Virus record (IMG/VR): IMGVR_UViG_3300040801_004034
Coordinates: 62,001 to 126,000 of that record
Reading direction: 5' to 3' (one strand)
Length of the DNA: 64,000 nucleotides
Within the stretch, counting starts at the first letter, position 1. Every line of letters starts with the position of its first letter. A model generated the notes under the pieces. The model did no database searches. It was given only the letters and a program-made list of their open reading frames with translations, and was not told the origin of the DNA. The position numbers and the translations under genes are program-made. Of the stretch, positions 19,081-62,752 are shown piece by piece.

Positions 19081-19491
19081 ATGGGTAAGTCAATAACACT
19101 ATTTGAAAAAGCTTTTATAGGTGAATTAACACCTGTCGATCCTGATGTTGAGAAGAATGTAGATAAAAAAGAACTGCAGATAGGTATTGAGGTTGAGATG
19201 GAGCATACGAAAGATAGGAAAGTAGCAAAACTTATTGCATTACAACATCTTGATGAAGATCCTAGATATTATACTAAGCTTAAGACAATTCATACTGATG
19301 AAGAAGATGAAAACACAGTAGGTGATGGTGTTCTCGGACCAAATTCATTTGCTAAGTCAAGTAGCCTTACAAGTACCGATAGTTATGCAGTAGGAGATGC
19401 AAGGGTACCAAAAAGTTTATTTAGTGGTGTTGTTAAACGTAACGGCTTAAGTAACTCAAAGCGCAAGAAGAAGAAAAAGAAAAAAACATAA
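19081..19491 (+). CDS. DUF5661-like late protein
   Basis: ELQIGIEVEMEHT....AKLIALQHLDEDPRYYTKL; TAAATA promoter. Confidence 0.75.
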   Translation: MGKSITLFEKAFIGELTPVDPDVEKNVDKKELQIGIEVEMEHTKDRKVAKLIALQHLDEDPRYYTKLKTIHTDEEDENTVGDGVLGPNSFAKSSSLTSTDSYAVGDARVPKSLFSGVVKRNGLSNSKRKKKKKKKT

Positions 19492-20219
19492 TGAAAAATT
19501 TTTATTACACAATACCGCAATCAAAATATACATTATTGTGTGATTTCTATGCTTTAGAATTGATTAACCACTATCGTGTTTAACACGATTGTGTATTTCC
19601 AACTAAATTATCGTTCTCTATCGATTGTGCAAGAGATACGATTTGTAATTATCTCATTCCATATCTATGTGATCAAATGTTTGTTGGTATTATCGCTGAA
19701 TTCTGTTTTGAAGGTCTTGACGAAGCTAATATTGTTGAGCAAAGCAAATTTAATTATCTCACACAGTTTTTTGATACGATCAATGAAATGAAGCACTTGC
19801 CTGATTTAGTTATGTTACACAGGATTAACGTTATTTCTAACGATATTAAATTACAAATAGCCTGTCACAATCACACACGTATTGATTTTGTTCGGTTCTT
19901 TAAGTCTTTATTAGATCATGACGATTTTTGGGTAAATATCGCTGATACATACATAGAGTTACACAGTTGTAATGATATAGACAAAAAAATATTATACATA
20001 GATCAATGCATACATATTCAACATTATTCTGGTTCAGTGCTTGATAAATCATTAGATCTACTACCTATTATTGATATGTTTTTACGTATGAAACGAAAAA
20101 TAACCTGTCTTTCTGATTATATCAATATTGGTGTGTCAGTGACTATGCACAAAATACTATTAAATACTATACAGATAGTTACAAGATATGATAAAAGATT
20201 TAGGACACTGGGAATATAA
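19491..20219 (+). pseudogene. Hypothetical gene (242 codons) with an internal TAA at 19581-19583
   Basis: ATG 19491 overlaps the previous stop and is in frame with ORF 19677..20219; only one stop lies between them. Confidence 0.55.
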
Positions 20220-20592
20220 TGGTGAAATACCAGATGATTGTTTTGGTTTCATTTATGAAATCACAAACAACAAAACTAACCGTAAATACATAGGCAAAAA
20301 GCAAATGCAGAAGCGTATTAAACGCAAACCACTTAAAGGTAAGAAGCGAAACCGTATTTGCTGGTTAGAAAGCGACTGGAAAACATATACTGGTAGCTGC
20401 AGGGAACTTAATGAGGAAATAGAACAGTATGGTAAGGAACACTTTACGTTTGAAATACTAAAACTATGTTGTTCTAAATCAGATCTTGCATATAATGAAA
20501 TTAAGTTACAACTAGAAAAAGATGTGTTGTTAAGAGAAGAATATTTCAATGGCATTATCAACTGCCGTCTTGGGAAAGTTAAGCTATCTTGA
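20188..20592 (+). CDS. Short GIY-YIG nuclease conserved in T4-like phages
   Basis: FGFIYEITN....KYIGKK...ESDWKTYTGS; catalytic domain only. Confidence 0.8.
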   Translation: MIKDLGHWEYNGEIPDDCFGFIYEITNNKTNRKYIGKKQMQKRIKRKPLKGKKRNRICWLESDWKTYTGSCRELNEEIEQYGKEHFTFEILKLCCSKSDLAYNEIKLQLEKDVLLREEYFNGIINCRLGKVKLS

Positions 20593-20625
20593 TTTTAACT
20601 TGTTCATAAGCTATAATGCTGTTAT

Positions 20626-21174
20626 ATGGTAGTAGAGCCACATAACTTTGAAATCGTTGATTTTAATAAACTTCTAAAAAGTAGTATTCAGATTAATATC
20701 GTTGATAATCTGTTTGATCTTAGCCTGGATGAAAATAAAAAACTTGGTAATGATATAAGAAATATAATGTTTCACCATATCATACATGGGTTATGTGAGC
20801 ATATTCTCAAAAAACAGAGTAAAGTGGTTGTGATATGTTGTGAAACAGAGTTTGAGTGTAGTGATCTTTACACGTTATATAGTAAAGAATCAGTTGATAA
20901 AGCTATTGTTAGTGCAATACGTAAGATTTCATCTTCATTACCAATATGCGTTTATAGAACACAACGAAATTTCAACACGATCGTTAAAATACTTGAGTCT
21001 AATGATGGTATGAGCGGAACACTTATAAATTCATTCAAATGTGCTATTGAAAAGAAGAATATTTCATCATATAACTTCAGCAAAATTAAAAAGATAGCTC
21101 AAACATACAATTTAACATTTTTAAACAAAGAATATTTTAACAACCTATCAACAAAGTTACTTCTAGTAAGGTAA
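20626..21174 (+). CDS. Hypothetical protein
   Basis: 182-aa ORF with TTGATT/TATAAT promoter. Confidence 0.55.
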   Translation: MVVEPHNFEIVDFNKLLKSSIQINIVDNLFDLSLDENKKLGNDIRNIMFHHIIHGLCEHILKKQSKVVVICCETEFECSDLYTLYSKESVDKAIVSAIRKISSSLPICVYRTQRNFNTIVKILESNDGMSGTLINSFKCAIEKKNISSYNFSKIKKIAQTYNLTFLNKEYFNNLSTKLLLVR

Positions 21175-21220
21175 ATCAAAAACTACTTAGAGTCATAGTT
21201 CGATATACATAAATAATGAT

Positions 21221-21847
21221 ATGGATAAGTTTACACGATTAGCAGAATCAGTTTGTCATACAATTAACGAGAATGCAGAAACACAGCAAGCACAGAGTGC
21301 TGCTATTGCGTTCAGGGATGAATTTTACGAACTGTATAAAAAATACTCAATAGATGATATCAGTCTTCAAGAATACAATGACAAGTATGATATGATCAAA
21401 ACCAAAGCTAAAGCAACACTTGATGCAAAAGCTCCTATCTGGGCGATTGATCCTGAAAAAGCTGGTGAATTCTCTGATGACTATAAGTCTGAAAATGGTG
21501 TTAGACCAAATCTCGATCAATGGGATGAACAAGAAGTGGATGATTGGACTGAAAGAAACAGATCGAGCAGCGAAGATGGTGAATCGCTTGCTTCAACTGT
21601 TCGTCCATTAGATGGTTTCTTTACAGGTGCTGATCAACCTTATATTAGTGATGAAGAAAGTACTGAAGAAGGGTTTCTAACACCAGACCAAACAACAGCA
21701 TTGAATACAGCTAAATCTCTTGCAACAAAACCAAAAGGTGGTATAAATCCATTCAACAAGCCACAGAAACAGATTGATAAAGCTCTTGGTGATATGTATA
21801 GTAAAGTAGCTAATAAAGTAACAAAAGTTTCAAGCCAAATCAAATAA
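21221..21847 (+). CDS. Hypothetical late protein (possible internal head protein)
   Basis: TAAATA-N5-ATG; N-terminus MDKFTRLAES..TINE. Confidence 0.6.
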   Translation: MDKFTRLAESVCHTINENAETQQAQSAAIAFRDEFYELYKKYSIDDISLQEYNDKYDMIKTKAKATLDAKAPIWAIDPEKAGEFSDDYKSENGVRPNLDQWDEQEVDDWTERNRSSSEDGESLASTVRPLDGFFTGADQPYISDEESTEEGFLTPDQTTALNTAKSLATKPKGGINPFNKPQKQIDKALGDMYSKVANKVTKVSSQIK

Positions 21848-21848
21848 T

Positions 21849-22166
21849 ATGAGTAAATTTCTAGAATCATTAAACCGTTATTATGAAAACACAGGTCTTG
21901 ATCAACCAGTTGAAGACCCGAATGCAGAAATGCCTATGCCTGAACCAGAAGGTGAGCCAGAAGCAGCTCCTGAACCGGAAGTTGATCCATTAACATCTGA
22001 AGGTGAAGTTCATTTAACAAGATTACTTCGTAAAGCTCTTCTAATGAATGTTGAAGAAGGTGATGTGGATGACATCGCACTTGAAGATGATATCAACGAA
22101 ACAAATAGTCGCCAGATGGTAGATAAAATCATCGGTGTTATGCGGAAGTATACAGACGATATTTAA
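21849..22166 (+). CDS. Hypothetical acidic protein
   Basis: Pro/Glu-rich 105-aa ORF; N-terminus MSKFLESLNRYYE. Confidence 0.6.
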   Translation: MSKFLESLNRYYENTGLDQPVEDPNAEMPMPEPEGEPEAAPEPEVDPLTSEGEVHLTRLLRKALLMNVEEGDVDDIALEDDINETNSRQMVDKIIGVMRKYTDDI

Positions 22167-22169
22167 TTT

Positions 22170-23150
22170 ATGGTAATACCAGATAATAACGTCCGTATAT
22201 TTGCGAAGATAAACGGACGCGAGATGCTTCATATCGGTGATGTTGTAACAAACTATTATCATGATGTATTGGTTAAACATGTTGAATTAGGTTCTATTGA
22301 AAAGGTCCGAATACGTAAACTCATCAAAGAACGACTTGATAGTTGTGGTGGTAATATCAATCAAAATGTCGATATCTGGCAAGATTATATAAATGAGGGT
22401 AATTTTGACCTCGTTGATGAAAAGTTTTTACGTTGTGAAAACATGTTACTCGATAAAATTCAGAATCATGATGTTTTCAGTCTTAATGAACTCATTTCAG
22501 CTGGTTGGAATGAAGCAAACATTAACAATCAATATTTTGACCAGGCATTTGAAACCGTACCAGAAGCGCCATTGTTTGGTAGACCAGGAGCTAGTGAGTT
22601 ATATTTAGCTTTCTTCTGTAATGGTGAAAAACCGAAAAAAGGTGATTTGAATGTCGGTGGGGTTGATATTGAACTTAAAGGCCCGGGCGGTAGATTATAT
22701 AAGACACCAAAACTTGTTACTGATTTTTCAGTACTCGATCAACAACTCGAAACAACCAGTGAAATTTTAAATGCTGTTGCGGATTTTATCAGTGGTTATG
22801 CTGGTACATTACATTTGAGATCACAAATTGGTGATATGGTTAATTTATTCGCAGCTGAATGTGAAAGGGAATACTTATACTATAAAGACAGAAACAAATT
22901 AAGACCAAAGAACATTCTTGTATATATAGGTGGGTTATCTCAATTATTTTCATATCAGAGTGCACAGGGGTTTGATGTTTTTACATCCTTTTCAAAATCA
23001 GATGATAATATCCAATTTAAAACTATCGACTTCAGACAAATATCCAATTTATTAGAGTTACACGCTGCTATTAAAAAAAATACATGGTTGAAATTTTCAA
23101 GAAATATTGATGGTAACGGTTGGTGCTTAGATAGAACACAAATAAAATAA
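22170..23150 (+). CDS. PD-(D/E)xK restriction-endonuclease-like protein
   Basis: GASELYLAF...KGDLNVGGVDIELKG motif. Confidence 0.55.
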   Translation: MVIPDNNVRIFAKINGREMLHIGDVVTNYYHDVLVKHVELGSIEKVRIRKLIKERLDSCGGNINQNVDIWQDYINEGNFDLVDEKFLRCENMLLDKIQNHDVFSLNELISAGWNEANINNQYFDQAFETVPEAPLFGRPGASELYLAFFCNGEKPKKGDLNVGGVDIELKGPGGRLYKTPKLVTDFSVLDQQLETTSEILNAVADFISGYAGTLHLRSQIGDMVNLFAAECEREYLYYKDRNKLRPKNILVYIGGLSQLFSYQSAQGFDVFTSFSKSDDNIQFKTIDFRQISNLLELHAAIKKNTWLKFSRNIDGNGWCLDRTQIK

Positions 23151-23154
23151 AATT

Positions 23155-23916
23155 ATGGGCGGAAATGCTGTAACAAATGTAGGACCAATTCATATTGACG
23201 AAATTGGTCCCACAATAGAAGCTCTCGAACAGGCACTCGGTATAAAATTGAGAGATAATACTCTTGGTTCAGTTGGTAAAAAAGACATATCAGGTGACAT
23301 CGATATAGCTATTGATATAAAAGTTGAAGACAGGCTTGATTTTATTGAACATCTTAAAACTTGTTGGATTGTACATGAAGTATCATTATCCTCTGTTGCA
23401 AGTACAAAAGTTGAGATAGTTAATTATAATCCAGATGTTAAAGCTGATAATCGAACAGGTTATGTACAGGTTGATTTTATGTTTGGTGATCCTGAATGGC
23501 TCAAACTTTTTTACCATTCACCATCTCAAAGTGAATCTAAATGGAAAGGCGCACATCGAAATGCTATGATATGTGCAATAACACAAGTTCATAAGTATAC
23601 AACTAGAGAAGGTATTACCTGGAGATATTCATGGTCACCGAAACGAGGTTTAATATATGTTAGGCGAGAACCAAAAATAGGTAAAAATGGTCGATTACTT
23701 AAAGCAACTATTGAAACACCAATTCATGGACCATATAGAACCGCTAGCGGAATAATTGATAATCTAGGTTTAAATTTTGTAAATGATTTAACCTCATATG
23801 AATCTCTTAGAGATGCTGTTAAGCTTAATTACTCACCTGTAAAAGCTGCATTAGTTATGGAGAAATTTAGAGAAAGTAGTCACTTAGAAAAAATGGGTGG
23901 AATCCCGCAAGATTAA
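23155..23916 (+). CDS. Pol-beta superfamily nucleotidyltransferase
   Basis: LGSVGKK..SGDIDIAID (GS...DxD) plus a third Asp in VQVDFM. Confidence 0.8.
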   Translation: MGGNAVTNVGPIHIDEIGPTIEALEQALGIKLRDNTLGSVGKKDISGDIDIAIDIKVEDRLDFIEHLKTCWIVHEVSLSSVASTKVEIVNYNPDVKADNRTGYVQVDFMFGDPEWLKLFYHSPSQSESKWKGAHRNAMICAITQVHKYTTREGITWRYSWSPKRGLIYVRREPKIGKNGRLLKATIETPIHGPYRTASGIIDNLGLNFVNDLTSYESLRDAVKLNYSPVKAALVMEKFRESSHLEKMGGIPQD

Positions 23917-23917
23917 C

Positions 23918-24802
23918 ATGAGTTCACGCAAAAGTATACAACATCTTTACTCATTAAATAAGCCTGATGTTTACTCAATGGATTTCTTTACTCTCAAAGA
24001 GTTCGCTGAAGAATTATCTAAGATAAATGGAATCATCGAACCTGGTAATACAACAGTATCTGAAAAAGTGGATGGTTCGGCTATATTCTTCGGTAAAGAA
24101 GACGGTAAGTTTTATATGGAAAGTAGCCATTCAGGTAAGGTATTCAAAGCAGAAGATTTTGAAGATGGTTCTCATGTACGATACCCTCAACACCCTTTAG
24201 CTCGAAAAGCATTTAGGGATAATTTTGATTCAATATTTGCTTTGGTAGGTCATACAATTAGTGATTATAACAACGTTCGAATTCAAGCTGAATGGTTTTA
24301 TACACCAATGGCTAAAAGATGTGTTAATCGTCATGGTTACGTGTTATTCATCGAGACTGATTACATTAAAGCTAAGCTTGGAAGATTGAGTACGTTTGTT
24401 GTGATTGATGCACCGAAAGAAGTTCAAAACAGATTGCTTGCTATTAATACTGTTGATGTCAAATTCTTATCACCTAAAATATCATCATTTCTTATTGTTG
24501 ATCTTAGTAAAGAACTGCAACAGCTCCAAGAAGCATTAAATATAGTTGAAGAGGAAACTGATATAGAAGCATTAAACCAACCAGCACGAAAGAAAGAAGA
24601 TAGACAAAGAAGAAACACAGTATTGGAATCAATTGAAAGACACTTATTACCACTTCAGGAATCTATTTATCATAAAATATATAATAAACTAACTAATGGT
24701 ACTGGTATACTTGGTGATATTGAAGGTTTTGTAGTAACATTAGGTCATATAACATTTAAAGTAAACAATCCACAATTCATGAAACGTAAATTCAACTTAT
24801 GA
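23918..24802 (+). CDS. ATP-dependent ligase-like covalent nucleotidyltransferase (RNA-ligase-like)
   Basis: Motif I EKVDG, motif III QAE, motif IV EGFVV, motif V FKV. Confidence 0.7.
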   Translation: MSSRKSIQHLYSLNKPDVYSMDFFTLKEFAEELSKINGIIEPGNTTVSEKVDGSAIFFGKEDGKFYMESSHSGKVFKAEDFEDGSHVRYPQHPLARKAFRDNFDSIFALVGHTISDYNNVRIQAEWFYTPMAKRCVNRHGYVLFIETDYIKAKLGRLSTFVVIDAPKEVQNRLLAINTVDVKFLSPKISSFLIVDLSKELQQLQEALNIVEEETDIEALNQPARKKEDRQRRNTVLESIERHLLPLQESIYHKIYNKLTNGTGILGDIEGFVVTLGHITFKVNNPQFMKRKFNL

Positions 24803-25500
24803 AACGAAAATTTAAAATACCGACACCAAAAACAAAAACCATTAACTTTGAATCAGCATACGATAAATTCAGTGATATTTCATCGCTACTGAATGAGTTT
24901 GATGAACAGAAGCATAAAAACGTGTTCGTTTTTTATCCTGGTAGGTTTCATCCATTCCATACCGGTCATACATCTATTTATCATGCATTGCAACAGCAAT
25001 TCCCTGACAGTCATGTTATTATAACAACATCTGATAAAGTTGATCCGCCAAATTCTCCATTCACGTTTGATGAAAAATACAAAATGATGGTTGTAGCTGG
25101 TGTTGATCCAGATTCAATTGCTGAAACACAATCACCATACCGAGCTACTGAAGTAGTGGAAGTACTTCCTGAAAATGCAATTACCATTTTTGCAATATCA
25201 GAAAAAGATATGAAAGGATCCAAAGCTAGAATCAACTTCAATCCTAAGAAAGATGGTTCACCAAGCTATCTTCAACCATTTGAATCAATTGAGGAATGTA
25301 AAGGTAGAATGGAGCACGGTTATGTAACAACATTACCTACATTGGATTTTGATTTAATGGGTAGCAATATCAATTCTGCAAGTGAATTAAGAAAAATATA
25401 TGCAGATGCAGATGAAATTAAGCGCCAGCAAATTATACAATATTTGTATGGTCGATTAGATGAAGAAATCTATAAGATCTTCAACCTTAAGATCGATTAA
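24799..25500 (+). CDS. HxGH (cytidylyltransferase/NMNAT-like) nucleotidyltransferase
   Basis: YPGRFHPFHTGH, PFTFDEK and SASELR motifs. Confidence 0.85.
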   Translation: MKRKFKIPTPKTKTINFESAYDKFSDISSLLNEFDEQKHKNVFVFYPGRFHPFHTGHTSIYHALQQQFPDSHVIITTSDKVDPPNSPFTFDEKYKMMVVAGVDPDSIAETQSPYRATEVVEVLPENAITIFAISEKDMKGSKARINFNPKKDGSPSYLQPFESIEECKGRMEHGYVTTLPTLDFDLMGSNINSASELRKIYADADEIKRQQIIQYLYGRLDEEIYKIFNLKID

Positions 25501-25880
25501 GATAACTCATTCATCGCTTTTATAATAAGCGCTTTAGCTAATTTCGGTGATTGGTTTATTTCATTTTCGATTTCACCTAAAAGTCTTACCACATCTTCAA
25601 CGAAAACGAGATCTCCATCAGCTTTCGGTTTGGTTATTGATTCTGAATCTTCAAAATCCCACCCTCCTGAATAATTATAACTTATACCATCATAACGTTG
25701 TATAAAACTACTCGTCTCTTCATCAGATGGAAATTCGATAGAAGTCTTTCCATCTAAAGGTACTGCATTTCCGAGATCTGTTACTCGTCTTGGTGCATTA
25801 GCTGGGTTACCACCAGCATTTGGTCCTAAACCAACATTTTCGGTGTATATTTCATATATAAGATTAAGTTCATGCTCCAT
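25497..25880 (-). CDS. Hypothetical late protein
   Basis: TAAATA-N5-ATG; N-terminus MEHELNLIYEIYTE. Confidence 0.6.
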   Translation of the reverse strand: MEHELNLIYEIYTENVGLGPNAGGNPANAPRRVTDLGNAVPLDGKTSIEFPSDEETSSFIQRYDGISYNYSGGWDFEDSESITKPKADGDLVFVEDVVRLLGEIENEINQSPKLAKALIIKAMNELS

Positions 25881-25884
25881 GTAA

Positions 25885-26787: not shown

Positions 26788-26845
26788 ATGATATTATTAT
26801 ACATTGTCATTCTTTGATGTCAATCATATCTGCATAAATAATATT

Positions 26846-27604: not shown

Positions 27605-27605
27605 T

Positions 27606-29031: not shown

Positions 29032-29045
29032 GATATAATTGATGA

Positions 29046-33987: not shown

Positions 33988-34281
33988 ATGATGTTTGATT
34001 TTGCAACTTTTTTTGAAGCTTCACAATGTGATAAGGATGATCTTGATAAGATGATCAACAACCCTGACCCTAAACGTATTAAAGAATATGGTGATGATAA
34101 ATATATCAAAATGCTGAAAAAGAAGAGAGCAGATCTCGATTCTGAAGACCAAGAAGATGCAATGACAGCAAATGATATCAAACATTACAAGAAGGTTAGA
34201 AAACCTACTATACCAACGAAAAAAATTCTTTCTAAAAAGGAAAAACTTCGTAATAAGCGTAATAAAAAGGTTGAATATTAA
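33988..34281 (+). CDS. Hypothetical late protein
   Basis: TAAATA-N5-ATG; N-terminus MMFDFATFFEA; basic tail. Confidence 0.55.
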   Translation: MMFDFATFFEASQCDKDDLDKMINNPDPKRIKEYGDDKYIKMLKKKRADLDSEDQEDAMTANDIKHYKKVRKPTIPTKKILSKKEKLRNKRNKKVEY

Positions 34282-34487: not shown

Positions 34488-34518
34488 CATATAGTAATGG
34501 TAGATATTAAATAATAGT

Positions 34519-34932
34519 ATGCTATCATTTAAAATGTTCTGGGAGGCTAAAGCACTTGGTCTCATTGAAAACCTCACAATCGACGGAATCGGTACTATAC
34601 CATCTAAGATTGATTCAGGTAATGGTGCATATAACGTCCTACATGGGGTGGATATCAACATAAGCGGAGATACTGTTCAATTTACATCTGTTGATAACCA
34701 CCCTATTGAGGCACAAATGGTAGACACAATCGAAATTAATATCGGAAGTGGTGTTATCGAAAAACGACCTGTTATACATCTCAATGTCACAATAGGTGAT
34801 CATAAATTTGAGAATGTAAGATTTTCTATCGGTGATAGAACAGAAAATGAGTATAAGATCCTTGTCGGGAAGGATTTCATAGAAGAACTCGGAGGGCTTA
34901 TTGACGTCACCACCGAGTTCAATTATAAGTAG
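34519..34932 (+). CDS. Retropepsin-like (RimK-associated type) aspartic protease
   Basis: KIDSGN, RPVI, FSIGDR and ILVGKDF motifs. Confidence 0.8.
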   Translation: MLSFKMFWEAKALGLIENLTIDGIGTIPSKIDSGNGAYNVLHGVDINISGDTVQFTSVDNHPIEAQMVDTIEINIGSGVIEKRPVIHLNVTIGDHKFENVRFSIGDRTENEYKILVGKDFIEELGGLIDVTTEFNYK

Positions 34933-35969: not shown

Positions 35970-36023
35970 ATGTCTATTATATAATGCTGCAATCTGTAAT
36001 CAACTGATATATTAAATAATAAT

Positions 36024-36551
36024 ATGAATAAACTTAATCTCAATAAAGAAATTTTGAAGGAAAAATTTGATGAAACAAAATTCAATCAATATAGTAATAG
36101 TATATTAAATGAAATTGCAACACCTAATGATAGTGGTTCATTAGCAAGTAAAACAGCGTCAGCAGTTTCAAGCTTCATCCCAGGTTCAATAGCTAATCTA
36201 CAAAAACGCGTACAAAAAAAGAGATTAAATGATGAGCTTAGTGGAAAAACAGATAAATTTAATCGACGTATCGATCAAACTAAACCTACGCAACAACCAC
36301 AAAAAACAGGTAAATCAAAATTTTATGCTTGCTTAAATCAATTCCTTGTTAAAAATAAACTAAATGCACAACAGTTAAATATTAATGTTGTATATAATTT
36401 CGTTAAATCACTCGGTGTGAAAGATGTAAAAAGAACATTGAAGAGCGCAGGAATGAATTTTGATACATATCATGAAAAACGTATAATTAACAACAATGAA
36501 TTATCATCATTAAAAGCGTTACTACAAAAACGTGGTTTTGTTTCTGAATAA
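36024..36551 (+). CDS. Hypothetical late protein
   Basis: TAAATA-N5-ATG; KFNQYSNSILNE motif. Confidence 0.55.
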   Translation: MNKLNLNKEILKEKFDETKFNQYSNSILNEIATPNDSGSLASKTASAVSSFIPGSIANLQKRVQKKRLNDELSGKTDKFNRRIDQTKPTQQPQKTGKSKFYACLNQFLVKNKLNAQQLNINVVYNFVKSLGVKDVKRTLKSAGMNFDTYHEKRIINNNELSSLKALLQKRGFVSE

Positions 36552-36877: not shown

Positions 36878-36878
36878 T

Positions 36879-41465: not shown

Positions 41466-42284
41466 ATGAGATTAAGTATCAGCGGAACAGCAAGCATCGG
41501 AAAGTCAACATTAATAGGTGATATGCTTGCTACATGGCCAGCATTCGAACACACAAAAGTGTCATATAGAGATATTCTTACGAATCAAAATTTACCACAT
41601 AGTAAAGAGTCAACAAAAGAGACACAATGGGCTATTTTGAATCATATGGTTGATCAGATGCAAGGGTACACACCACAAGATAAAGTAATCTTTGATAGAT
41701 GCCCTCTTGATAATTTAGTTTATAGCATGTGGTTATTTGATAAAGGTCTTGGTGGTGTCGACGAGAAGTTTATTGATAAGTGTCTTCCTATTGTATCTGA
41801 AAGTATGAAATCACTTGATATCATATTTTTCATTCCTATGACAAAATTCAATAAAATGAATATTGTAGATAACGGTACAAGAGAAACAGATCCGGTTTAC
41901 ATTTCTGAAATTGATCAAATATTCAAAGGTCTCCAAGCTCAGTACCAACAGCACCCGCAAGAAAATCCTTTCTTTCCGCGAGATGATTCACCAGCTCTTA
42001 TAGAGATTTTCGGATCAAGAAAAGAACGTATTCAAATGATAAAACTTTATCTTGATGATGATGGTGATGTTATTGGTGGGGAAAATGGAGCTAATGAAGT
42101 TTTCTCTCCGGAAAATATCAGTTTAGTTGAAGATCTTTTAAAGGAGCAACAAAAACTAAATGATAGTGAAAAAGCTTATACCGCTGAAATGGACAAAATT
42201 AAGGACTTTGTTAGACATAACAAAGGTGTAGATGTCGGTGTTGATATCAGAAAGCTTTCAAAAGATAAATATGATCTTTATTAA
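41466..42284 (+). CDS. P-loop nucleotide/nucleoside kinase-like protein
   Basis: ISGTASIGKST and IFDRCPLDNLVY motifs. Confidence 0.75.
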   Translation: MRLSISGTASIGKSTLIGDMLATWPAFEHTKVSYRDILTNQNLPHSKESTKETQWAILNHMVDQMQGYTPQDKVIFDRCPLDNLVYSMWLFDKGLGGVDEKFIDKCLPIVSESMKSLDIIFFIPMTKFNKMNIVDNGTRETDPVYISEIDQIFKGLQAQYQQHPQENPFFPRDDSPALIEIFGSRKERIQMIKLYLDDDGDVIGGENGANEVFSPENISLVEDLLKEQQKLNDSEKAYTAEMDKIKDFVRHNKGVDVGVDIRKLSKDKYDLY

Positions 42285-42592
42285 GCGTTTGCTATGGTGG
42301 TTACAGTACCACTTGAACCTTTATATTTAAAAGCACCGTTCTGTACATAAAATGTACCACCATTTACTGGTGTATCAGGTTCGGATGTATTTTTAACTGT
42401 AATAGCAGTATCAAATGTACCAGAACCTATATCAGCTATAGCTGATCCAAAAGTGGTGTTATCCAAATCAATGACAAAATTACTGAATGGTATTTTAAAT
42501 GTACCGCCTTGTGTTTCTACAATCAGATAATCACTAGGATTTATTTCGGATGCTTCTGGTAATGTTTTAATTGATTTTGAATTGCCTGCCAT
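42281..42592 (-). CDS. Late protein, possibly virion structural
   Basis: TAAATA-N5-ATG; IKTLPEA...DYLIVET and fibre-like C-terminus GAFKYKGSSGTVTTIA. Confidence 0.55.
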   Translation of the reverse strand: MAGNSKSIKTLPEASEINPSDYLIVETQGGTFKIPFSNFVIDLDNTTFGSAIADIGSGTFDTAITVKNTSEPDTPVNGGTFYVQNGAFKYKGSSGTVTTIANA

Positions 42593-52046: not shown

Positions 52047-52544
52047 ATGTCACTCTTCAACGAGCAATATAATCAAATAATATCAGAAATTTTTGGTCCA
52101 AATGAAGCATTCCCACTAAATTGGACTGAAAAATCTGATGACTTTTGGGAATGTAATTTTGAAACAAAAAAATCAGGACGATTTGAAGTAACTATTATCA
52201 TGGAACTTCCCGGTAAATGGGAAATTATATTTGCTGCGATGAAATTTCATGGTGAAAATGAATATGGTGAAAATGAATATATACCACAGCTTGATCCAAC
52301 TAATGCAAAGACCGGTGAAGAATTATTGATTTATGGTTCTGTTATAAATGCAGCTAGAGAGTTCATGACACAAATGCAACCACCAATGATATTTTTTACC
52401 AATGATAAAACTACATCACCTAAAAGAACAAAACTCTATCATGCACTTGCAAAAAAAATATCGACAGAATTCCCTAATTATAAACAGCAAGCTACGGGTC
52501 TTAGAAATGGTAAAGATGTGATTGCATTTGTGAAGGTTAATTAA
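52047..52544 (+). CDS. Hypothetical late protein
   Basis: TAAATA-N5-ATG; N-terminus MSLFNEQYNQIISE. Confidence 0.6.
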   Translation: MSLFNEQYNQIISEIFGPNEAFPLNWTEKSDDFWECNFETKKSGRFEVTIIMELPGKWEIIFAAMKFHGENEYGENEYIPQLDPTNAKTGEELLIYGSVINAAREFMTQMQPPMIFFTNDKTTSPKRTKLYHALAKKISTEFPNYKQQATGLRNGKDVIAFVKVN

Positions 52545-52554
52545 GTATTAACAA

Positions 52555-53130
52555 ATGAATTTCGAAAGTTACCACTACATCGACGAAGGTATTAAGGATC
52601 AACTTAAATCCGGTGCTATAACTCTTGCTACAGCTACTGCATTAAATGCAGCTAACTTAGACCCTATTGAATTGTATAATCAGATCGCTGATCATGAAGG
52701 TGTTGTACAACAAGCTTACGTTGATTCAACAGGTCATAAAACGATTGGTATAGGGTTTAACTTGGATGATGCTTCAAATATTAAAAAGCTTGAAAAAATC
52801 GGAGTTTCAGTTGAGGATTTACTTTCTGGTAAACAATTATCTGATAGCGAAATAAAAACATTGTATAATATTTCAATATCTCAAGCATACCGAGATGCAA
52901 AAACATTTTTACCGGATTTAGAGTCTCATCCTTCAGATGTTCAGAAAGCTGTCGTAGATATGTCGTTCAATCTAGGGTTGACTCGATTATTGAAGTTCAA
53001 ACAAGTAAGACAAGCACTTTTTCAACGCAACTATCGTAAAGCTGCAGATGAAATGTTAAATTCATTGTGGGCAAAGCAAACAGGCCGAAGAGCACAAAAG
53101 CTAGCTAATATGGTACGTAATGCTACTTAA
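52555..53130 (+). CDS. T4-type lysozyme (GH24)
   Basis: HEG....YVDSTGHKTIGIG catalytic E-D-T; DMSFNLG, AADEM..S.WA.Q..RA. Confidence 0.92.
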   Translation: MNFESYHYIDEGIKDQLKSGAITLATATALNAANLDPIELYNQIADHEGVVQQAYVDSTGHKTIGIGFNLDDASNIKKLEKIGVSVEDLLSGKQLSDSEIKTLYNISISQAYRDAKTFLPDLESHPSDVQKAVVDMSFNLGLTRLLKFKQVRQALFQRNYRKAADEMLNSLWAKQTGRRAQKLANMVRNAT

Positions 53131-53489
53131 GTAGCTTGATAAAAGGAATGTATATCTTTATCTTCATCGTATAGAACAAAGATATCGTGGTATTTGAAGT
53201 TGTCACCATTCATTTCTACCTGTCTACCAAACTCTGACATACTTCCGAAGATGGTATTAACAAGGTCCTCATCAATGCAGGTACCTATTAGCTCCATTTC
53301 TTCATCACTCGGCAACATAAAATGAGCTGCTTTTGGGTTAGGTGTAAGATTACCAAAGCTTCCTGCTCGTGCAGGTGTTTTAATCATCGTATTGTTTGGT
53401 GAATCATCTTTTGCATTTACTCTACGCTGGATAGCAATAGGTGCATTAAAATCCTCAAGTAGGTCTGTTACTAAAGAGTTGAATTTCAT
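53127..53489 (-). CDS. Hypothetical late protein
   Basis: TAAGTA-N5-ATG; N-terminus MKFNSLVTDLLE. Confidence 0.55.
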   Translation of the reverse strand: MKFNSLVTDLLEDFNAPIAIQRRVNAKDDSPNNTMIKTPARAGSFGNLTPNPKAAHFMLPSDEEMELIGTCIDEDLVNTIFGSMSEFGRQVEMNGDNFKYHDIFVLYDEDKDIHSFYQAT

Positions 53490-53507
53490 ATAAATACTTA
53501 TACAATT

Positions 53508-53870: not shown

Positions 53871-53873
53871 AAC

Positions 53874-54619: not shown

Positions 54620-54693
54620 ACTGTTAACTCTTAATAGTTTATAAAAAGTTTACGCAAAAACGTAGGAAATAAAAATCCAACTTAAATAATATT

Positions 54694-57900: not shown

Positions 57901-57923
57901 ACGGAACATCTATAATATTCAGT

Positions 57924-58484
57924 ATGAAATATGCTAATTTATACACCGCTAAAGGTGATACTGGTATGACCGACCTTTGGTCTGGTGGAAGAGTATTGAA
58001 AAATCATTTCCGTATTAAAGCGGTTGGTAAAATTGATACATTCCATGCAACTCTTGGTCTTTGTCATCAATATGAGCCTTCTTCGGATCATTATACAATA
58101 CTCAAAGAGTTTTTACATAAAGTACAGACAGATCTTACCAAAATTATGGGTGTAATTGCTAGTGAAACTATCAAAGATGGTTTTGTTGTTGAGTTTGATG
58201 TGATGAATCAGTTTTTATATAAACACATTGTTAAATATGCTGAATGGCTTGATGATCAATCAATAAAACAACAGGGTTGGAAGATGTATGGTGAAGGAGG
58301 AGCAGCCGCTGCTCAGTATGATTACACAACCACTATTTGCCGTGAAGTTGAGATCATGATTTATGATCTGGAAAATGTTTACGGAATGACTATCAGTGAT
58401 GGAATGAAACAGTATTTCAATATGTTGAGTAAAGTCCTATATCTCATTGCACGCATATATGAACATCAGGATGATATTAAATAA
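57924..58484 (+). CDS. pduO: PduO-type cob(I)alamin adenosyltransferase
   Basis: YTAKGDTGMT.L..G.RV.K...RI.A.G.ID; CREVE; YFN.LS..LY..AR. Confidence 0.88.
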   Translation: MKYANLYTAKGDTGMTDLWSGGRVLKNHFRIKAVGKIDTFHATLGLCHQYEPSSDHYTILKEFLHKVQTDLTKIMGVIASETIKDGFVVEFDVMNQFLYKHIVKYAEWLDDQSIKQQGWKMYGEGGAAAAQYDYTTTICREVEIMIYDLENVYGMTISDGMKQYFNMLSKVLYLIARIYEHQDDIK

Positions 58485-58488
58485 TATT

Positions 58489-58758
58489 ATGGGTAATGAT
58501 GATTGTTTAATTTTTGAAGCGTATAAAGGTTCTGATTTGATTACAGAGCAGTATAATGAATGGTGGGATGCAAAGATGCAAATTGATGAACTCAAACCCG
58601 GGTATTATATTGGGTATCAATCAGGTAGTGTTATCAAAATAAATGAAAAAGAATATAAAGCAGGTGATACCGTCCGTGGAATGAATTTTCCATTCGTTTT
58701 GAGAGTTCAACGAAATGGAAAAGTATTTAAGCATTATATCCCGAATGAACGTGGTTGA
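58489..58758 (+). CDS. Hypothetical late protein
   Basis: TAAATA-N5-ATG; N-terminus MGNDDCLIFEAY. Confidence 0.5.
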   Translation: MGNDDCLIFEAYKGSDLITEQYNEWWDAKMQIDELKPGYYIGYQSGSVIKINEKEYKAGDTVRGMNFPFVLRVQRNGKVFKHYIPNERG

Positions 58759-58788
58759 ATTATTATTTTCGTATGATATAATCATCGA

Positions 58789-59530: not shown

Positions 59531-59595
59531 GTTCATTGTATAAATATTTTTAGAAATCGCCAGTAGTGGCGCTCGTCCGAAAGGAAGTAAATAAT

Positions 59596-60411: not shown

Positions 60412-60435
60412 GAACAAATAGAAAATAAACATTTC

Positions 60436-60469
60436 AAATACCTATTCGTAATTGGATAGGTATTTTTTT
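60436..60469 (+). terminator. Intrinsic terminator
   Basis: AAATACCTATTC-loop-GGATAGGTATTTTTTT. Confidence 0.8.
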
Positions 60470-60502
60470 GGAGACGGAACAACACTATACTAGACATACA
60501 TT

Positions 60503-61108: not shown

Positions 61109-61127
61109 TAGATATTGGTCAACAGAT

Positions 61128-61386
61128 ATGTTTTTCAAAGCCTGCTCCTCTTGAAAAGGACTCAAGAGGAGCAGTTATTGCTATCGGTAAAAACGTCGCA
61201 TACAACTATCAAGGTAGTGTAACGGTCGGAACGATCAAAGAAATCAAACGTAATAAGTGGAAAAAATGTAGACCTGGTTTCGAAGGACAACATTGGTATC
61301 AATTAAAATTTGTGATGACAGTTGATCATGAATCAGGTGAATTCACATCAACAATTAAAAATCCGAATAGTTTCATTATCATTTGA
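61128..61386 (+). pseudogene. Probable small gene with a 1-nt frameshift in the T5 run right after its ATG
   Basis: 85-codon open frame 61129-61386 without an upstream ATG; deleting one T at 61131-61135 gives MFSKPAPLEKDSRG...NPNSFIII. Confidence 0.45.
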
Positions 61387-61403
61387 TAACTAATTTAAAT
61401 TTT

Positions 61404-61637
61404 ATGCAAGAATTAAAACAATTTGTAGAAGAAGGTGGTAATGTTGTAGAGTGTGAGCCTAGAACATATTATTATGATACTGGTTATTCATACTCATTTT
61501 CAAAACCTGGTGATGATGGGTGTATCGTAATGGTTAACTCTATAGGCGACGCTATTAAAAAATACAATTTAAAATACATTAAGTCATATACAATTAAACA
61601 GCCTCAACCTAGTGATGGTGAATTAACGGAACAATGA
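61404..61637 (+). CDS. Hypothetical protein
   Basis: 77-aa ORF. Confidence 0.45.
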   Translation: MQELKQFVEEGGNVVECEPRTYYYDTGYSYSFSKPGDDGCIVMVNSIGDAIKKYNLKYIKSYTIKQPQPSDGELTEQ

Positions 61638-61649
61638 TATCATATTAGT

Positions 61650-62162
61650 ATGAAAAAGGTTATTTATTACCAAGGTATTCGAAGAGAAGGTGCATGGGAC
61701 AGCACTGAGCACTTTAACTCTAAAGTTGACGGGCTTGAAAAGGCCGGTTATGTTGTAGAGCGTGTACCATCTTGCAGAGATTATGATCTATCTCTTAGAA
61801 AGTTTCTAGACATTACACCAACTACAGATGTCGAAATGATTGTTGGTTGTTCTCTTGGTGGTTTTTGGGCAAATAAACTTGCATGCAAATATAACATTCC
61901 TGTTTTGCTGATTAACCCGCAATTGCTACCGCTTTATTATACCATGGATGAGCGCGCAATTGATACAAAACAAATCGAACGTACATTCTTTCTTGCAAAA
62001 GATGATGATATTCTAGATTATAGACTCACACAACATTTTATTGAAACCAACAGTATCAATGGTGATGTGCGTGTTTTTGATTATGGTCAACACCATTTTG
62101 GTTCTGAGAAATGTGTTAATGAAATTGTTGAGTACATAAATAACTATGTACCATGCGATTAA
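61650..62162 (+). CDS. YqiA/YcfP-like alpha/beta hydrolase
   Basis: GCSLGGFWA nucleophile elbow, LINP, DD.LD, HHF. Confidence 0.85.
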   Translation: MKKVIYYQGIRREGAWDSTEHFNSKVDGLEKAGYVVERVPSCRDYDLSLRKFLDITPTTDVEMIVGCSLGGFWANKLACKYNIPVLLINPQLLPLYYTMDERAIDTKQIERTFFLAKDDDILDYRLTQHFIETNSINGDVRVFDYGQHHFGSEKCVNEIVEYINNYVPCD

Positions 62163-62752
62163 ATTTTCAAGAGTTCTTTTGTGAATCATTTTCAAACCTT
62201 TTCATTAACAAAGATGATGAAAAGCGTAGACAGTTAGCAGATCAAATCCATAGTATGGTGGGTGCATCATATCAGAAAGCTACTGGTCAGCAAAACTTAG
62301 CTTTTGGTATGCAGTCTCCAGAAGCTATGCTTGAAACCATACCATTTTGGAAAATCGCAAAACGTGATGGACGTATAAGAGCAGTCATTCTTTATAAAGA
62401 TAAGAATGGAAGAAAATCGATGGCAATTGCAACCGATAGTACTAAAGAAGGAAAAAATCTTCTCAAACAAATGCTGCATGATGACATGATACGAAATCGA
62501 GCATACAGTGAAATTTCCGATCCATCACTTTCATTCAGAAAGAAAATTCTCCCAGCAAATTTATCAATTCAAGACATAGCTATACCATTTGAAGAAGTTC
62601 AGAAGATGATGCCTAATATAACTAGACCACCACAAGATGATCCGCATGTTATAAAACATCCTGAACTTGAGCCATATTTCTATCAGAGAGAGTTCGGTGG
62701 AGATCTAAAGACAAAAATAATGGTCGGTCAAATTGGTAATGAAATATCATAA
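62153..62752 (+). CDS. Hypothetical protein (possible internal head protein)
   Basis: N-terminus MRLNFQEFFCES; FWK...LYK.K.GRK, YSE.S, Y.R..GG....K.M.G. Confidence 0.6.
   Translation: MRLNFQEFFCESFSNLFINKDDEKRRQLADQIHSMVGASYQKATGQQNLAFGMQSPEAMLETIPFWKIAKRDGRIRAVILYKDKNGRKSMAIATDSTKEGKNLLKQMLHDDMIRNRAYSEISDPSLSFRKKILPANLSIQDIAIPFEEVQKMMPNITRPPQDDPHVIKHPELEPYFYQREFGGDLKTKIMVGQIGNEIS

What the first reader, a model, noticed from the sequence alone, without database searches (positions are those of the whole stretch)
19081..62752. Family of proteins with capsid-targeting-like N-termini: predicted packaged and injected enzymes
Many mostly late-promoter ORFs start with a short F/Y...E peptide resembling the T4 internal-protein capsid-targeting sequence (MKTYQEFIAE) that prohead protease removes. 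Examples: MLSFKMFWE (protease 34519), MNFESYHYIDE (lysozyme 52555), MRLNFQEFFCE (62153), MMFDFATFFE (33988), MSLFNEQYNQIISE (52047), MKFNSLVTDLLE (53489), MEHELNLIYEIYTE (25880), MSKFLESLNRYYE (21849), MDKFTRLAES..INE (21221), MGNDDCLIFE (58489). Inference: a cargo set, including a lysozyme and an aspartic protease, is packaged and delivered with the DNA.
Basis: inference. Interest (0 to 1): 0.6.

Follow-up and report, generated by a model that had tools for sequence, protein, structure and literature searches.

The report
Capsid-targeting-like tags on late phage proteins
A deeply divergent, uncultured T4-like jumbo phage puts two short, position-locked N-terminal peptides (one almost identical to T4's experimentally defined capsid-targeting sequence) on dozens of unrelated late proteins, including a retropepsin-like protease and a GNAT-fold enzyme, which most likely marks them for packaging into the head and trimming by the head protease, although no virion data exist.

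Summary
The window lies in a complete 221-kb T4-superfamily phage from a microbial-mat metagenome. It has a gp21-type prohead protease and a gp23-type capsid protein.

All quoted N-termini are real. Inside it are real signals:
- T4's protease motif [LI]-x-E at residues 8-14 marks 30% of late gene families against 8% of early ones (p=1e-5).
- Class A tag, M(N/K)(K/T)D(S/T)(K/H)-LIFE|AY: always N-terminal, on at least 25 unrelated protein families; reversed-codon control 0 hits against at least 118.
- Class B tag, M-x-(T/S)-F-K-x-F-(F/Y)-E: near-identical to T4 IPI/IPIII, on at least 22 families; control 5 against 79.

The syntenic scaffold protein has the genome's highest [LI]-x-E density, as in T4 gp22. 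Tail, neck and terminase homologs lack the motif.

Of the ten examples, five are solid: 25880, 33988, 34519 (retropepsin-like protease), 58489 and 62153 (GNAT fold). Family 21849 is conserved. 21221, 52047 and 53489 are untestable. The lysozyme has a strong rival reading as an exported or SAR-type endolysin.

Packaging, cleavage and injection are inferred. Verdict: partly supported; a new variant of a known kind.

The parts
34519..34932 (+). Class B-tagged retropepsin-like aspartic peptidase, 137 aa. Tag MLSFKMFWE at 34519-34545. D-S-G active-site motif at residue 32-34.
   Evidence: Pfam PF05618, E=1.9e-7. AF2 model pLDDT 82.7, with residues 4-12 forming a helix before the beta-barrel. Foldseek top hits are Lpg0085/DUF785, RloA/RloA2 aspartic peptidases and HIV-1 protease. 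110 of 120 homologs start M-I-(T/S/N)-F-K-x-F-(F/Y)-E, and F4, K5, F7 and E9 are near-invariant. The G002 and G003 orthologs start MRS(Y/F)KEFFYE. Late motif TAAATAATAGT lies before the ATG.
62153..62752 (+). Class B-tagged GNAT-fold protein, 199 aa. Tag MRLNFQEFFCE at 62153-62185.
   Evidence: AF2 model pLDDT 80.9; residues 1-11 are all below 50 and the fold starts at residue 13. All top Foldseek and VIA hits are GNAT acyltransferases, Z 9-10, rmsd about 3.6 A over about 140 residues. E11 is invariant in the 10-sequence family alignment; the peptide before it varies in length and the conserved body starts right after it.
33988..34281 (+). Class B-tagged small protein, 97 aa. Tag MMFDFATFFE at 33988-34017.
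   Evidence: Matches the class B regex at its N-terminus. Its only divergent homolog (L167) starts MKTFKQFFEE. Late motif ATAAATAAATGT. No Pfam or PHROG family and no further relatives.
58489..58758 (+). Class A-tagged small protein, 89 aa. Tag MGNDDCLIFE|AY at 58489-58518.
   Evidence: Class A motif six residues after the Met, behind ATTAAATAATATT. Body unrelated to other tagged proteins.
25497..25880 (-). Class A-tagged small acidic protein, 127 aa. Tag MEHELNLIYE|IY at 25851-25880.
   Evidence: Class A variant LIYEIY six residues after the Met, behind TTAAATAATTAC. No family.
19081..19491 (+). DUF5661 protein, 136 aa, with a degenerate class A-like N-terminus MGKSITLFE at 19081-19107.
   Evidence: PF18905, E=3e-12. 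DUF5661 homologs in relatives carry canonical class A tags: MDRESKLIFEAY in G001 and MQKESRLIWEAY in L168. Late motif TGTAAATACTTAC.
21849..22166 (+). Small acidic Pro/Glu/Ala-rich protein, 105 aa. N-terminal amphipathic peptide MSKFLESLNRYYE at 21849-21887. Candidate prohead-core or internal protein.
   Evidence: All six homologs found end their N-terminal peptide in [LI]-x-E just before the P/E/A-rich region; G000's own copy has Y-Y-E. No promoter of its own; it abuts 21221.
21221..21847 (+). Late protein, 208 aa, with MDKFTRLAE at 21221-21247 (L-A-E at residue 9; F4 and L7 in T4-like spacing).
   Evidence: Sequence and late motif ATAAATAATGAT. Homologs align only C-terminally, so conservation of the N-terminus could not be tested.
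52555..53130 (+). GH24 (T4-type) lysozyme, 191 aa, with a ~37-aa N-terminal extension: MNFESYHYIDE at 52555-52587, then GIKDQLK, then an Ala/Thr-rich weakly hydrophobic stretch.
   Evidence: PF00959, E=4e-10. Catalytic E48/D57/T63 by alignment to T4 e. The closest homologs share an aromatic peptide ending in Glu, then G(F/I)KxK, then a ~18-aa hydrophobic segment; more distant homologs lack the whole module. Ambiguous between capsid cargo and exported or SAR-type endolysin.
52047..52544 (+). Orphan late protein, 165 aa, with MSLFNEQYNQIISE at 52047-52088 (I-S-E at residue 14).
   Evidence: Late motif TTTAAATATTTAA. Only weak PHROG hits of unknown function. The only relative is an identical contig, so the motif cannot be told from chance.
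53127..53489 (-). Orphan protein, 120 aa, with MKFNSLVTDLLE at 53454-53489 (L-L-E at residue 12).
   Evidence: TAAGTA variant motif upstream. The only relative is an identical contig. Untestable.
36024..36551 (+). Additional late ORF, 175 aa, with a generic motif (..EILKE at residue 13).
   Evidence: Late-anchored list. No Pfam family.
42281..42592 (-). Additional late ORF, 103 aa, with ..KTLPE|AS at residue 13.
   Evidence: Late-anchored list.
18664..19032 (-). Additional late ORF, 122 aa, with ..FNLKE|AA at residue 15.
   Evidence: Late-anchored list.

Best explanation
The class A and class B N-terminal peptides, and probably some of the looser Phi-x-E N-termini, are capsid-targeting propeptides of the T4 kind.

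Proposed mechanism:
1. The genes are transcribed late from TAAATA-type promoters.
2. The short N-terminal peptide binds the scaffolding core as the prohead assembles, so the attached protein is enclosed.
3. The gp21-type prohead protease cuts after the Glu that ends the tag (I-F-E|A in class A). In class B it cuts at F-x-E or at a nearby L-x-E.
4. The mature protein stays in the DNA-filled head and can leave with the DNA at infection.

In this window the predicted cargo is a retropepsin-like aspartic peptidase (34519), a GNAT-fold protein (62153), a DUF5661 protein (19081) and small orphan proteins (25880, 33988, 58489, and probably 21849).

Shown: the tags exist, are N-terminus-locked, late-associated, modular and under protein-level constraint. 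The phage has gp21, and its scaffold carries the [LI]-x-E signature.

Inferred: binding to the core, cleavage, presence in virions and injection.
For: 1. The phage is T4-type. Peptidase_S77/gp21 scores E=1.9e-30 and gp23 scores E=2.6e-92. No HK97-type S78 protease is present.
2. The protease specificity appears conserved. The syntenic scaffold has 18 [LI]-x-E sites in 296 aa (z=6.1), the highest density in the genome, like T4 gp22 (16 in 269 aa, z=5.1). Its orthologs rank 2nd and 1st in the relatives. gp21 N-termini keep L-(I/L)-V-E at residue 8. gp23 keeps C-(I/L)-x-E|(A/G) near residue 60.
3. [LI]-x-E at residues 8-14 is found in 39/132 late families against 10/125 early families, p=1.2e-5, with early genes at the compositional expectation. 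It is absent from 9 of 9 tail, neck, portal and terminase homologs.
4. Class A occurs 16 times at N-termini against 0.05 expected. The Met is at -6 in 59/73 unique N-termini and position -3 is acidic in 73/73, neither imposed by the search pattern. It sits on at least 25 BLAST-unrelated families. Codons vary synonymously. At least 118 IMG/VR stretches carry it, against 0 for the reversed-codon control.
5. Class B is about 7-fold enriched at N-termini. It gives 79 IMG/VR stretches against 5 for the control, on 22 unrelated families. Relatives have MKTFKEFYLE and MRSYKEFFYE, against T4 IPI MKTFKEF.. and IPIII MKTYQEFIAE read from the T4 record.
6. The tag lies outside the fold. In the GNAT-fold model residues 1-11 have pLDDT below 50 and E11 is invariant at the boundary. 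In the protease model the tag is a separate helix before the barrel.
7. Literature: gp21 cuts after L/I-X-E, the 10-residue IPIII CTS suffices for packaging, residues 4 and 7 target while 8 and 10 govern processing, and T-even internal proteins share only the CTS (PMC9026906, PMC3012670).
Against: - There is no virion proteome, N-terminal sequencing or cultured relative. The closest isolates have only 32-34% identical capsid proteins.
- Most class B tags have Phe, not Leu or Ile, two residues before the Glu, which departs from the T4 processing rule.
- Class A lacks the aromatic residues at T4 positions 4 and 7 that matter for targeting in T4.
- The near-invariant N-terminus of the protease family could serve the enzyme itself, for example in dimerisation or regulation.
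- The AF2 protease model gives the helix a moderate pLDDT of about 75, so it may pack on the domain.
- The gp21-plus-tagged-protein complex prediction gave no verdict.
- The enrichment implies that only about a fifth of late families carry a real signal, so any single generic Phi-x-E example may be chance.
Confidence: 0.62

Rival explanations
1. The tags are real N-terminal signals but serve another purpose. Possibilities are targeting to a different virion compartment or assembly intermediate, recognition by another protease or chaperone (for example timed degradation), or export or membrane association.
For: Class A differs from the T4 CTS at the positions that direct targeting in T4. The lysozyme family combines a class B-like peptide with a hydrophobic segment that looks like a signal-anchor. 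No direct link to the head exists beyond analogy and the shared Glu motif.
Against: Class B matches the experimentally defined T4 CTS almost residue for residue. The tags end in the motif that is over-represented in the scaffold and present at the protease's own N-terminus. Tail, neck and terminase proteins lack it. Most tagged proteins have no hydrophobic segment after the tag.
Confidence: 0.22
2. For the lysozyme (52555) specifically: it is the phage's endolysin, exported or membrane-tethered by its N-terminal module (SAR-type or signal-anchor), and not capsid cargo.
For: The closest homologs carry a Gly/Ala/Ser/Leu-rich hydrophobic segment of about 18 residues, preceded by Lys residues, between the N-terminal peptide and the GH24 domain. 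More distant homologs lack the whole module. It is the only T4 e/gp5-lysozyme homolog in the genome, so it is the obvious candidate for lysis.
Against: In the window's copy the segment is only weakly hydrophobic (mean Kyte-Doolittle about 0.96 over 17 residues). An aromatic peptide of 10-14 residues ending in Glu precedes it in most homologs, which is unusual for a signal n-region and resembles class B. The hub-like protein was not hit by T4 gp5 (only the window lysozyme matched its lysozyme domain), so a lysozyme supplied separately to the virion is conceivable.
Confidence: 0.5
3. The shared N-termini are by-products of a mobile late-promoter-plus-5'-end cassette that spreads by recombination and gives different genes the same start, without a targeting role.
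For: The tags always come with the TAAATAAT motif at a fixed distance. Three G000 copies share 14 identical nucleotides across the LIFEA codons.
Against: Across genomes the same residues are encoded by different codons: four to five Leu codons, three Ile codons and four Ala codons. Unconstrained flanking positions (Met at -6, acidic at -3) are conserved at the protein level in 73 unique N-termini. In the protease and GNAT families the tag is conserved or replaced by a functionally similar peptide over long divergence.
Confidence: 0.06
4. Nothing is there. F/Y...E N-termini are a compositional accident of an AT-rich genome.
For: The orphan examples 52047 and 53489 cannot be told from chance.
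Against: The late-versus-early contrast, N-terminal exclusivity, the reversed-codon controls and the scaffold enrichment.
Confidence: 0.05

Closest known systems
Bacteriophage T4 capsid targeting sequence (CTS) of internal proteins IPI, IPII, IPIII and Alt
   Same: A short N-terminal peptide of about 10 residues, with hydrophobic or aromatic residues three apart, ending in Glu. It is carried by late-expressed, otherwise unrelated, often small proteins whose genes are scattered outside the head cluster. The phage encodes gp21, and its scaffold is rich in [LI]-x-E. Class B is nearly the same sequence (MKTFKEF.. / M.(T/S)FK.F(F/Y)E against T4 MKTFKEF.. / MKTYQEFIAE).
   Different: - The capsid protein is only about 28% identical to T4's, and the lineage is uncultured.
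- A second, distinct tag (class A, ..D(S/T)(K/H)LIFE|AY) has no counterpart that I know of in T4.
- The repertoire is far larger: at least 25 plus at least 22 unrelated families across the lineage, and about 10 genes per genome.
- Class B usually has Phe rather than Ile or Leu two residues before the Glu.
- Packaging and cleavage are not demonstrated.
Propeptide-bearing head and ejection proteins of phiKZ-like and SPN3US-like giant phages
   Same: Many head-internal proteins are processed after Glu by a T4-gp21-related prohead protease, including enzymes that are ejected into the host (PMC9026906).
   Different: Those phages cut at S/A-X-E and their propeptides are long and diverse, with no short shared N-terminal tag. 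Here the motif is hydrophobic-x-E and the tag is short and stereotyped.
SAR (signal-anchor-release) endolysins of the GH24 family
   Same: The lysozyme at 52555 and its homologs have an N-terminal, weakly hydrophobic Gly/Ala/Ser-rich segment in front of a T4-type lysozyme domain.
   Different: An extra aromatic peptide ending in Glu, resembling class B, precedes the segment. The window's copy is less hydrophobic than its homologs. This applies to one protein only.
RimB/RloA-type retropepsin-like aspartic peptidases (PF05618, DUF785)
   Same: ORF 34519 shares the fold and the D-(S/T)-G motif.
   Different: Here it is a standalone phage late protein with a CTS-like N-terminal helix. In Pelagibacter phage Mosig the domain is fused to an ATP-grasp enzyme in the replication region and carries no tag.

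Membership tests
T4-type CTS-bearing internal (packaged) proteins | The phage encodes a gp21-type (Peptidase S77) prohead protease and a T4-type head core | tested here: met
   PF03420 E=1.9e-30 and PF07068 E=2.6e-92. Syntenic order: gp4-like, gp21, small ORF, scaffold, gp23.
T4-type CTS-bearing internal (packaged) proteins | N-terminal peptide of about 10 residues ending in the gp21 site L/I-X-E | tested here: inconclusive
   Class A meets it (I-F-E|A in 70/73 unique N-termini). Class B mostly has F-x-E, although the protease family has an invariant G-L-(I/V)-E at residue 17. The GNAT family mostly has [LI]-x-E, but the window's own copy has F-C-E.
T4-type CTS-bearing internal (packaged) proteins | Targeting determinants: aromatic or hydrophobic residues at CTS positions 4 and 7 | tested here: inconclusive
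   Class B meets it (F/Y at position 4, F at position 7). Class A has Asp/Ser/Lys there and hydrophobic residues only at positions -3 to -1 relative to the Glu.
T4-type CTS-bearing internal (packaged) proteins | The tag is the only feature shared by otherwise unrelated proteins | tested here: met
   25 class A clusters and 22 class B clusters with no BLAST similarity between bodies.
T4-type CTS-bearing internal (packaged) proteins | Late expression together with head genes | tested here: inconclusive
   TAAATA(A/T) motif 5 nt before the ATG, the same motif as before the gp18, gp19, gp20, gp21 and gp25 homologs. No RNA data are available.
T4-type CTS-bearing internal (packaged) proteins | Protein present in the mature head with the tag removed | not testable with these tools
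   Needs virion proteomics or N-terminal sequencing. There is no cultured relative.
T4-type CTS-bearing internal (packaged) proteins | Protein ejected into the host with the DNA | not testable with these tools
   Needs infection experiments.
Retropepsin-like aspartic peptidase (PF05618 / DUF785 / RloA-like), for ORF 34519 | Retropepsin-like beta-barrel fold with a D-(S/T)-G active-site motif | tested here: met
   Pfam E=1.9e-7. D32 and G34 are invariant and S33 is near-invariant. Foldseek E=2.5e-8 to 2pma and E=2.4e-7 to 9g58. Activity was not tested.
GNAT acyltransferase superfamily, for ORF 62153 | GNAT fold | tested here: met
   VIA Z 8.5-10 over about 140 residues, with all 50 top entries being GNAT. 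There is no sequence-family hit. Cofactor binding and activity were not tested.
SAR/signal-anchor endolysin, for ORF 52555 | N-terminal weakly hydrophobic transmembrane-like segment before the muralytic domain | tested here: inconclusive
   Clear in the homologs. Weak in the window's copy (mean hydropathy about 0.96). No holin or pinholin context was examined.

The most novel reading that the evidence does not exclude
This widespread uncultured T4-like lineage runs a two-tag capsid-loading system. One tag is the ancestral T4-type CTS. The other is a new tag (..DSK-LIFE|AY). Any late protein can acquire either tag. The lineage uses them to pack and inject a large, fast-turning-over arsenal of effectors, including enzymes such as a retropepsin-like protease and a GNAT-fold transferase. 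If so, the tags are a sequence-only handle for finding injected anti-host or anti-defence proteins in metagenomic phages.
Probability: 0.35. Interest if true: 0.75.

Novelty: new variant of a known kind. Interest (0 to 1): 0.6.

Why it matters
T4's CTS is the textbook case of a phage loading arbitrary proteins into its head. To my knowledge, and in the papers I could search, it has been described only for T-even phages.

If the tags work here as proposed:
- The targeting peptide has survived roughly as long as the T4 head core itself (capsid proteins about 28% identical).
- A second tag has arisen.
- The cargo includes enzymes not previously known as phage-injected proteins.

In practice the tags would let injected effectors be predicted from sequence alone in thousands of uncultured phage genomes. 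They would also offer new short peptides for loading proteins into T4-type capsids. If the tags prove to have another role, they are still a sharply defined, unexplained N-terminal signal on more than 45 protein families.

Tried and rejected
tested against internal windows and two kinds of shuffle. No enrichment.
- **DNA-level searches of the cultured-phage collection:** no match. The protein-level search shows only distant T4-like relatives.
- **Pfam and PHROGs on the ten proteins:** eight have no significant family; ORF 52047 has only weak PHROG hits of unknown function. PHROGs on head-module and conserved tagged proteins added only gp4-like, neck and unknown-function families.
- **ORFs 52047, 53489 and 33988:** no informative relatives.
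- **ESM Atlas look-up of ORF 62153:** nothing usable.
- **Complex prediction of the gp21 homolog with the class A protein 58489:** no verdict, so it counts neither for nor against.
- **Sequencing runs:** only DNA runs from one microbial-mat sample, the probable source, hold the phage. Transcript starts and expression could not be examined, and read laying was not used.
- **Literature:** the searches found no description of CTS-like tags outside T-even phages; the papers checked were not relevant to this lineage.
- **Tag as the N-terminal dimer strand of the retropepsin fold:** considered and rejected, because the model puts a helix there and the barrel starts at residue 16.
- **'IDE' at residue 11 of the lysozyme as its catalytic Glu (as in T4 lysozyme):** considered and rejected, because the catalytic Glu aligns at residue 48.

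Full report
**What the window is.** The 64-kb window is positions 62001-126000 of a complete 221,292-bp virus record of about 35% GC. The genome encodes a gp21-type prohead protease (Peptidase_S77, E=1.9e-30, genome 152529-153197, minus strand). It also encodes a gp23-type major capsid protein (E=2.6e-92), and it has no HK97-type S78 protease. The head module lies outside the window, in T4-like order: portal, neck, gp4-like, gp21, a 49-aa ORF, a 296-aa scaffold-like protein, then gp23. No cultured phage is close. The best capsid matches are cyanophages at 32-34% identity, and T4's gp23 is about 28% identical. The lineage is abundant in metagenomes: more than 600 IMG/VR contigs have capsid proteins 70-82% identical. 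I pulled two complete relatives, G001 (217 kb) and G002 (230 kb), for comparison. Only DNA runs from one microbial-mat metagenome hold the phage.

**Checking the observation.** The motif as defined, an F or Y followed by an E within about 14 residues, is not enriched. It occurs in 69 of 322 proteins, against 68-74 for internal windows and 72-74 for shuffles. The observation as stated is therefore chance-level. A motif defined in advance from T4 is not. The T4 record and reviews (PMC9026906, PMC3012670) establish the following:
- gp21 cuts after L/I-X-E.
- IPII/IPIII (MKTYQEFIAE|A), Alt, gp22, gp21, gp24 and gp68 all begin with a peptide ending in that motif at residue 9-13.
- The 10-residue IPIII peptide suffices to load foreign proteins into heads.

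In this genome [LI]-x-E ending at residue 8-14 occurs in 42 proteins, against about 23 expected.

**Promoter classes as an internal control.** Two upstream motifs sit at fixed distances from start codons. TAAATA ends 5 nt before the ATG in 34 of 66 cases. TATAAT ends 6 nt before it in 38 of 57 cases, often as GGAAC-N5-TATAAT, and the relatives show the same spacing. The TAAATA class precedes the sheath, tube, portal, baseplate and protease homologs. It resembles T4's late promoter TATAAATA (my own knowledge), so I treat it as late. I anchored starts on these motifs alone and collapsed orthologs across the three genomes. On that basis [LI]-x-E at 8-14 marks 39 of 132 late families (30%) against 10 of 125 early families (8%), Fisher p=1.2e-5. 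Early genes sit at the 7% compositional expectation. Nine homologs of T4 neck, tail, baseplate, portal and terminase proteins have none. The signal is therefore not a general property of late or virion proteins.

**Two sharp tags.** Listing the late N-termini exposed two stereotyped classes.

*Class A* is M-x(1-4)-(N/D)(D/E)(S/T)(K/H/R)-L-I-(F/Y)-E|(A/S)(Y/F).
- In six-frame translation of this genome the core hexapeptide occurs five times, each 6-9 residues after a start Met.
- In the three proteomes a slightly relaxed form of the motif occurs 16 times at N-termini against one 'internal' case, which is the mis-called start of ORF 58489. Only 0.05 are expected.
- Codons differ synonymously between copies, and the protein bodies are unrelated.
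The same pattern with the codons in reverse order found none.
- Among 86 tagged proteins there are 25 BLAST-unrelated clusters. Positions my pattern did not constrain are also conserved: the Met lies exactly six residues upstream in 59 of 73 unique N-termini, and position -3 is acidic in 73 of 73.

*Class B* is (F/Y)-x-x-F-(F/W/Y/I)-x?-E starting at residue 3-5.
- It occurs 11 times at N-termini against 1.55 expected from the internal rate.
- Members in the relatives read MKTFKEFYLE, MKKFKEFFTE, MKSFKEFILE and MRSYKEFFYE. That is almost T4's own CTS, and the first seven residues of one equal T4 IPI.
- The promoter-anchored scan found 79 stretches against 5 for the reversed control, with 68 complete ORFs in 22 unrelated clusters.

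**Independent support for a conserved protease specificity.** In T4 the scaffold gp22 is cut into multiple fragments by gp21 (PMC9026906), and it has 16 [LI]-x-E sites in 269 aa (z=5.1). The syntenic scaffold here has 18 in 296 aa (z=6.1). That is the highest density among the 238 proteins of at least 100 aa, where the median is about 1 per 100 aa. Its orthologs rank 2nd and 1st in G001 and G002. The gp21 homologs all begin M-x-x-x-L-(I/L)-V-E, compared with T4's ..LLIE. The capsid proteins keep C-(I/L)-x-E|(A/G) near residue 60, close to where T4 gp23 is cut.

| ORF | Assessment | Key evidence |
|---|---|---|
| 34519 | Solid, class B; retropepsin-like aspartic peptidase | Pfam PF05618; invariant D32 and G34; Foldseek to Lpg0085/DUF785, RloA/RloA2 and HIV-1 protease. 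About 110 of the 120 best homologs begin M-I-(T/S/N)-F-K-x-F-(F/Y)-E. In the AF2 model (pLDDT 82.7) residues 4-12 form a helix ahead of the barrel, so the tag is not the retropepsin N-terminal strand. |
| 62153 | Solid, class B; GNAT fold | VIA Z 9-10 with all top entries GNAT. Residues 1-11 all have pLDDT below 50 and the fold starts at residue 13. E11 is invariant across homologs from several phage lineages; the peptide before it varies and usually ends [LI]-x-E. |
| 33988 | Solid, class B | Its one divergent homolog starts MKTFKQFFEE. |
| 58489, 25880 | Solid, class A |. |
| 21849 | Conserved family | All six homologs found keep an N-terminal amphipathic stretch ending [LI]-x-E just before a Pro/Glu/Ala-rich region; G000's own copy has Y-Y-E there. 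|
| 19081 (the range start) | Likely; DUF5661 protein | Homologs carry canonical class A tags. |
| 21221 | Fits the generic motif | No informative homolog N-termini. |
| 52047, 53489 | Untestable | Orphans. |
| 52555 (lysozyme) | Special case | See below. |

**The lysozyme.** Its catalytic residues align at E48, D57 and T63, so the first 37 or so residues are an extension. Its closest homologs share a module with three parts: an aromatic peptide ending in Glu, then G(F/I)KxK, then a hydrophobic segment of about 18 residues. More distant homologs lack the whole module. That looks like a signal-anchor or SAR-type endolysin at least as much as capsid cargo. It is also the only T4 e/gp5-lysozyme homolog in the genome.

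**Mechanism.** The best-supported reading is that classes A and B are capsid-targeting propeptides. Late expression places the proteins in the cell while proheads assemble. The tag docks on the scaffolding core. gp21 then removes the tag at the terminal Glu, and the mature protein remains in the head and can be ejected. The genes sit singly among metabolic and auxiliary genes (radical-SAM/SPASM, FolE2, helicase, intein-containing ribonucleotide reductase, cobalamin adenosyltransferase, glycosyltransferases). Each has its own late motif, much as T4's ip and alt genes lie outside the head cluster and ipII/ipIII lie beside lysozyme gene e. What is shown is the sequence signal, its position lock, its modularity, its late association and the conserved protease context. 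Core binding, cleavage, virion residence and injection are inferred.

**Rivals.** These are another role for a real signal, an exported endolysin for ORF 52555, hitch-hiking on a mobile promoter cassette, and chance. Each is weighed in the fields above.

**Novelty.** CTS-directed packaging is known for T4 and its close relatives, and the reviews note that the CTS may be a general way for T4-like phages to load proteins. I found no description of it in distant T4-like lineages, nor of the class A tag. Filing: it works like the T4 CTS. Membership is met for protease context and modularity, inconclusive for the exact processing and targeting residues and for late expression, and untestable for virion presence. 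I rate it a new variant of a known kind, of moderate-to-good interest.

Noticed in passing
whole window and genome; e.g. window 34505-34521, 25881-25895, 36010-36026: Genes appear to be largely leaderless. The late motif TAAATA ends exactly 5 nt before the ATG in 34/66 genes. TATAAT ends exactly 6 nt before it in 38/57. GGAAC-N5-TATAAT-N6-ATG occurs 36 times. Shine-Dalgarno-like words are essentially absent upstream of promoter-adjacent genes (1/63 late, 1/46 early, against 5% background). The spacing is conserved in both complete relatives. Genome-wide leaderless expression would be unusual for a T4-like phage.
   Followed up: partly
window 54694-57900 and 57924-58484: The 1068-aa ribonucleotide reductase-like ORF has an intein-splicing-domain hit (residues about 132-400). 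It is followed directly by a cobalamin adenosyltransferase, which suggests a B12-dependent RNR with its cofactor-activating enzyme.
   Followed up: no
window about 22170-33972 and 34941-35969: An island of about 12 kb holds sugar-nucleotide, glycosyltransferase, epimerase-like, radical-SAM/SPASM and FolE2 genes. It separates late genes (21221/21849 and 33988/34519) whose homologs lie within about 2 kb of each other in relative G001. It could be a DNA or surface-glycan modification module.
   Followed up: no
window 52555-53130; genome 144486-146726: The GH24 lysozyme is the only homolog of T4 e or of the gp5 lysozyme domain in the genome. The 746-aa hub-like protein was not hit by T4 gp5 in BLAST.
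   Followed up: partly
window 19081-19491; L100:16850-17398; protein P0031: DUF5661 recurs on tagged proteins. In one metagenomic protein it is fused, after an N-terminal ..ILTE peptide, to the same hydrophobic segment plus GH24 lysozyme. This links DUF5661, the tags and the lysozyme module.
   Followed up: partly
L094:18487-19374 (G001) and about 35 IMG/VR homologs: The largest class A family (280-330 aa, absent from this genome) has a second conserved (L/V)-x-E|AP site about 10 residues after the LIFE|AY tag. This is reminiscent of T4 IPI's longer 19-residue propeptide. There may be two cuts, or targeting and cleavage may be separated.
   Followed up: no
L337:2011-3396 (Pelagibacter phage Mosig): The only cultured-phage homolog of the retropepsin-like domain is the C-terminal part of a 461-aa ATP-grasp 'glutathione synthetase' (RimK-like) protein in the replication region, and it is untagged. 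This hints at an ancestral RimK/RimB-type pairing.
   Followed up: no
genome 153704-154441 (outside the window; L118:7704-8441): A 245-aa class B-tagged protein (MQSFSKFYE..; phrog_36119, unknown function) sits inside the head module between the gp4-like and neck genes. It has no ortholog in the two relatives.
   Followed up: partly
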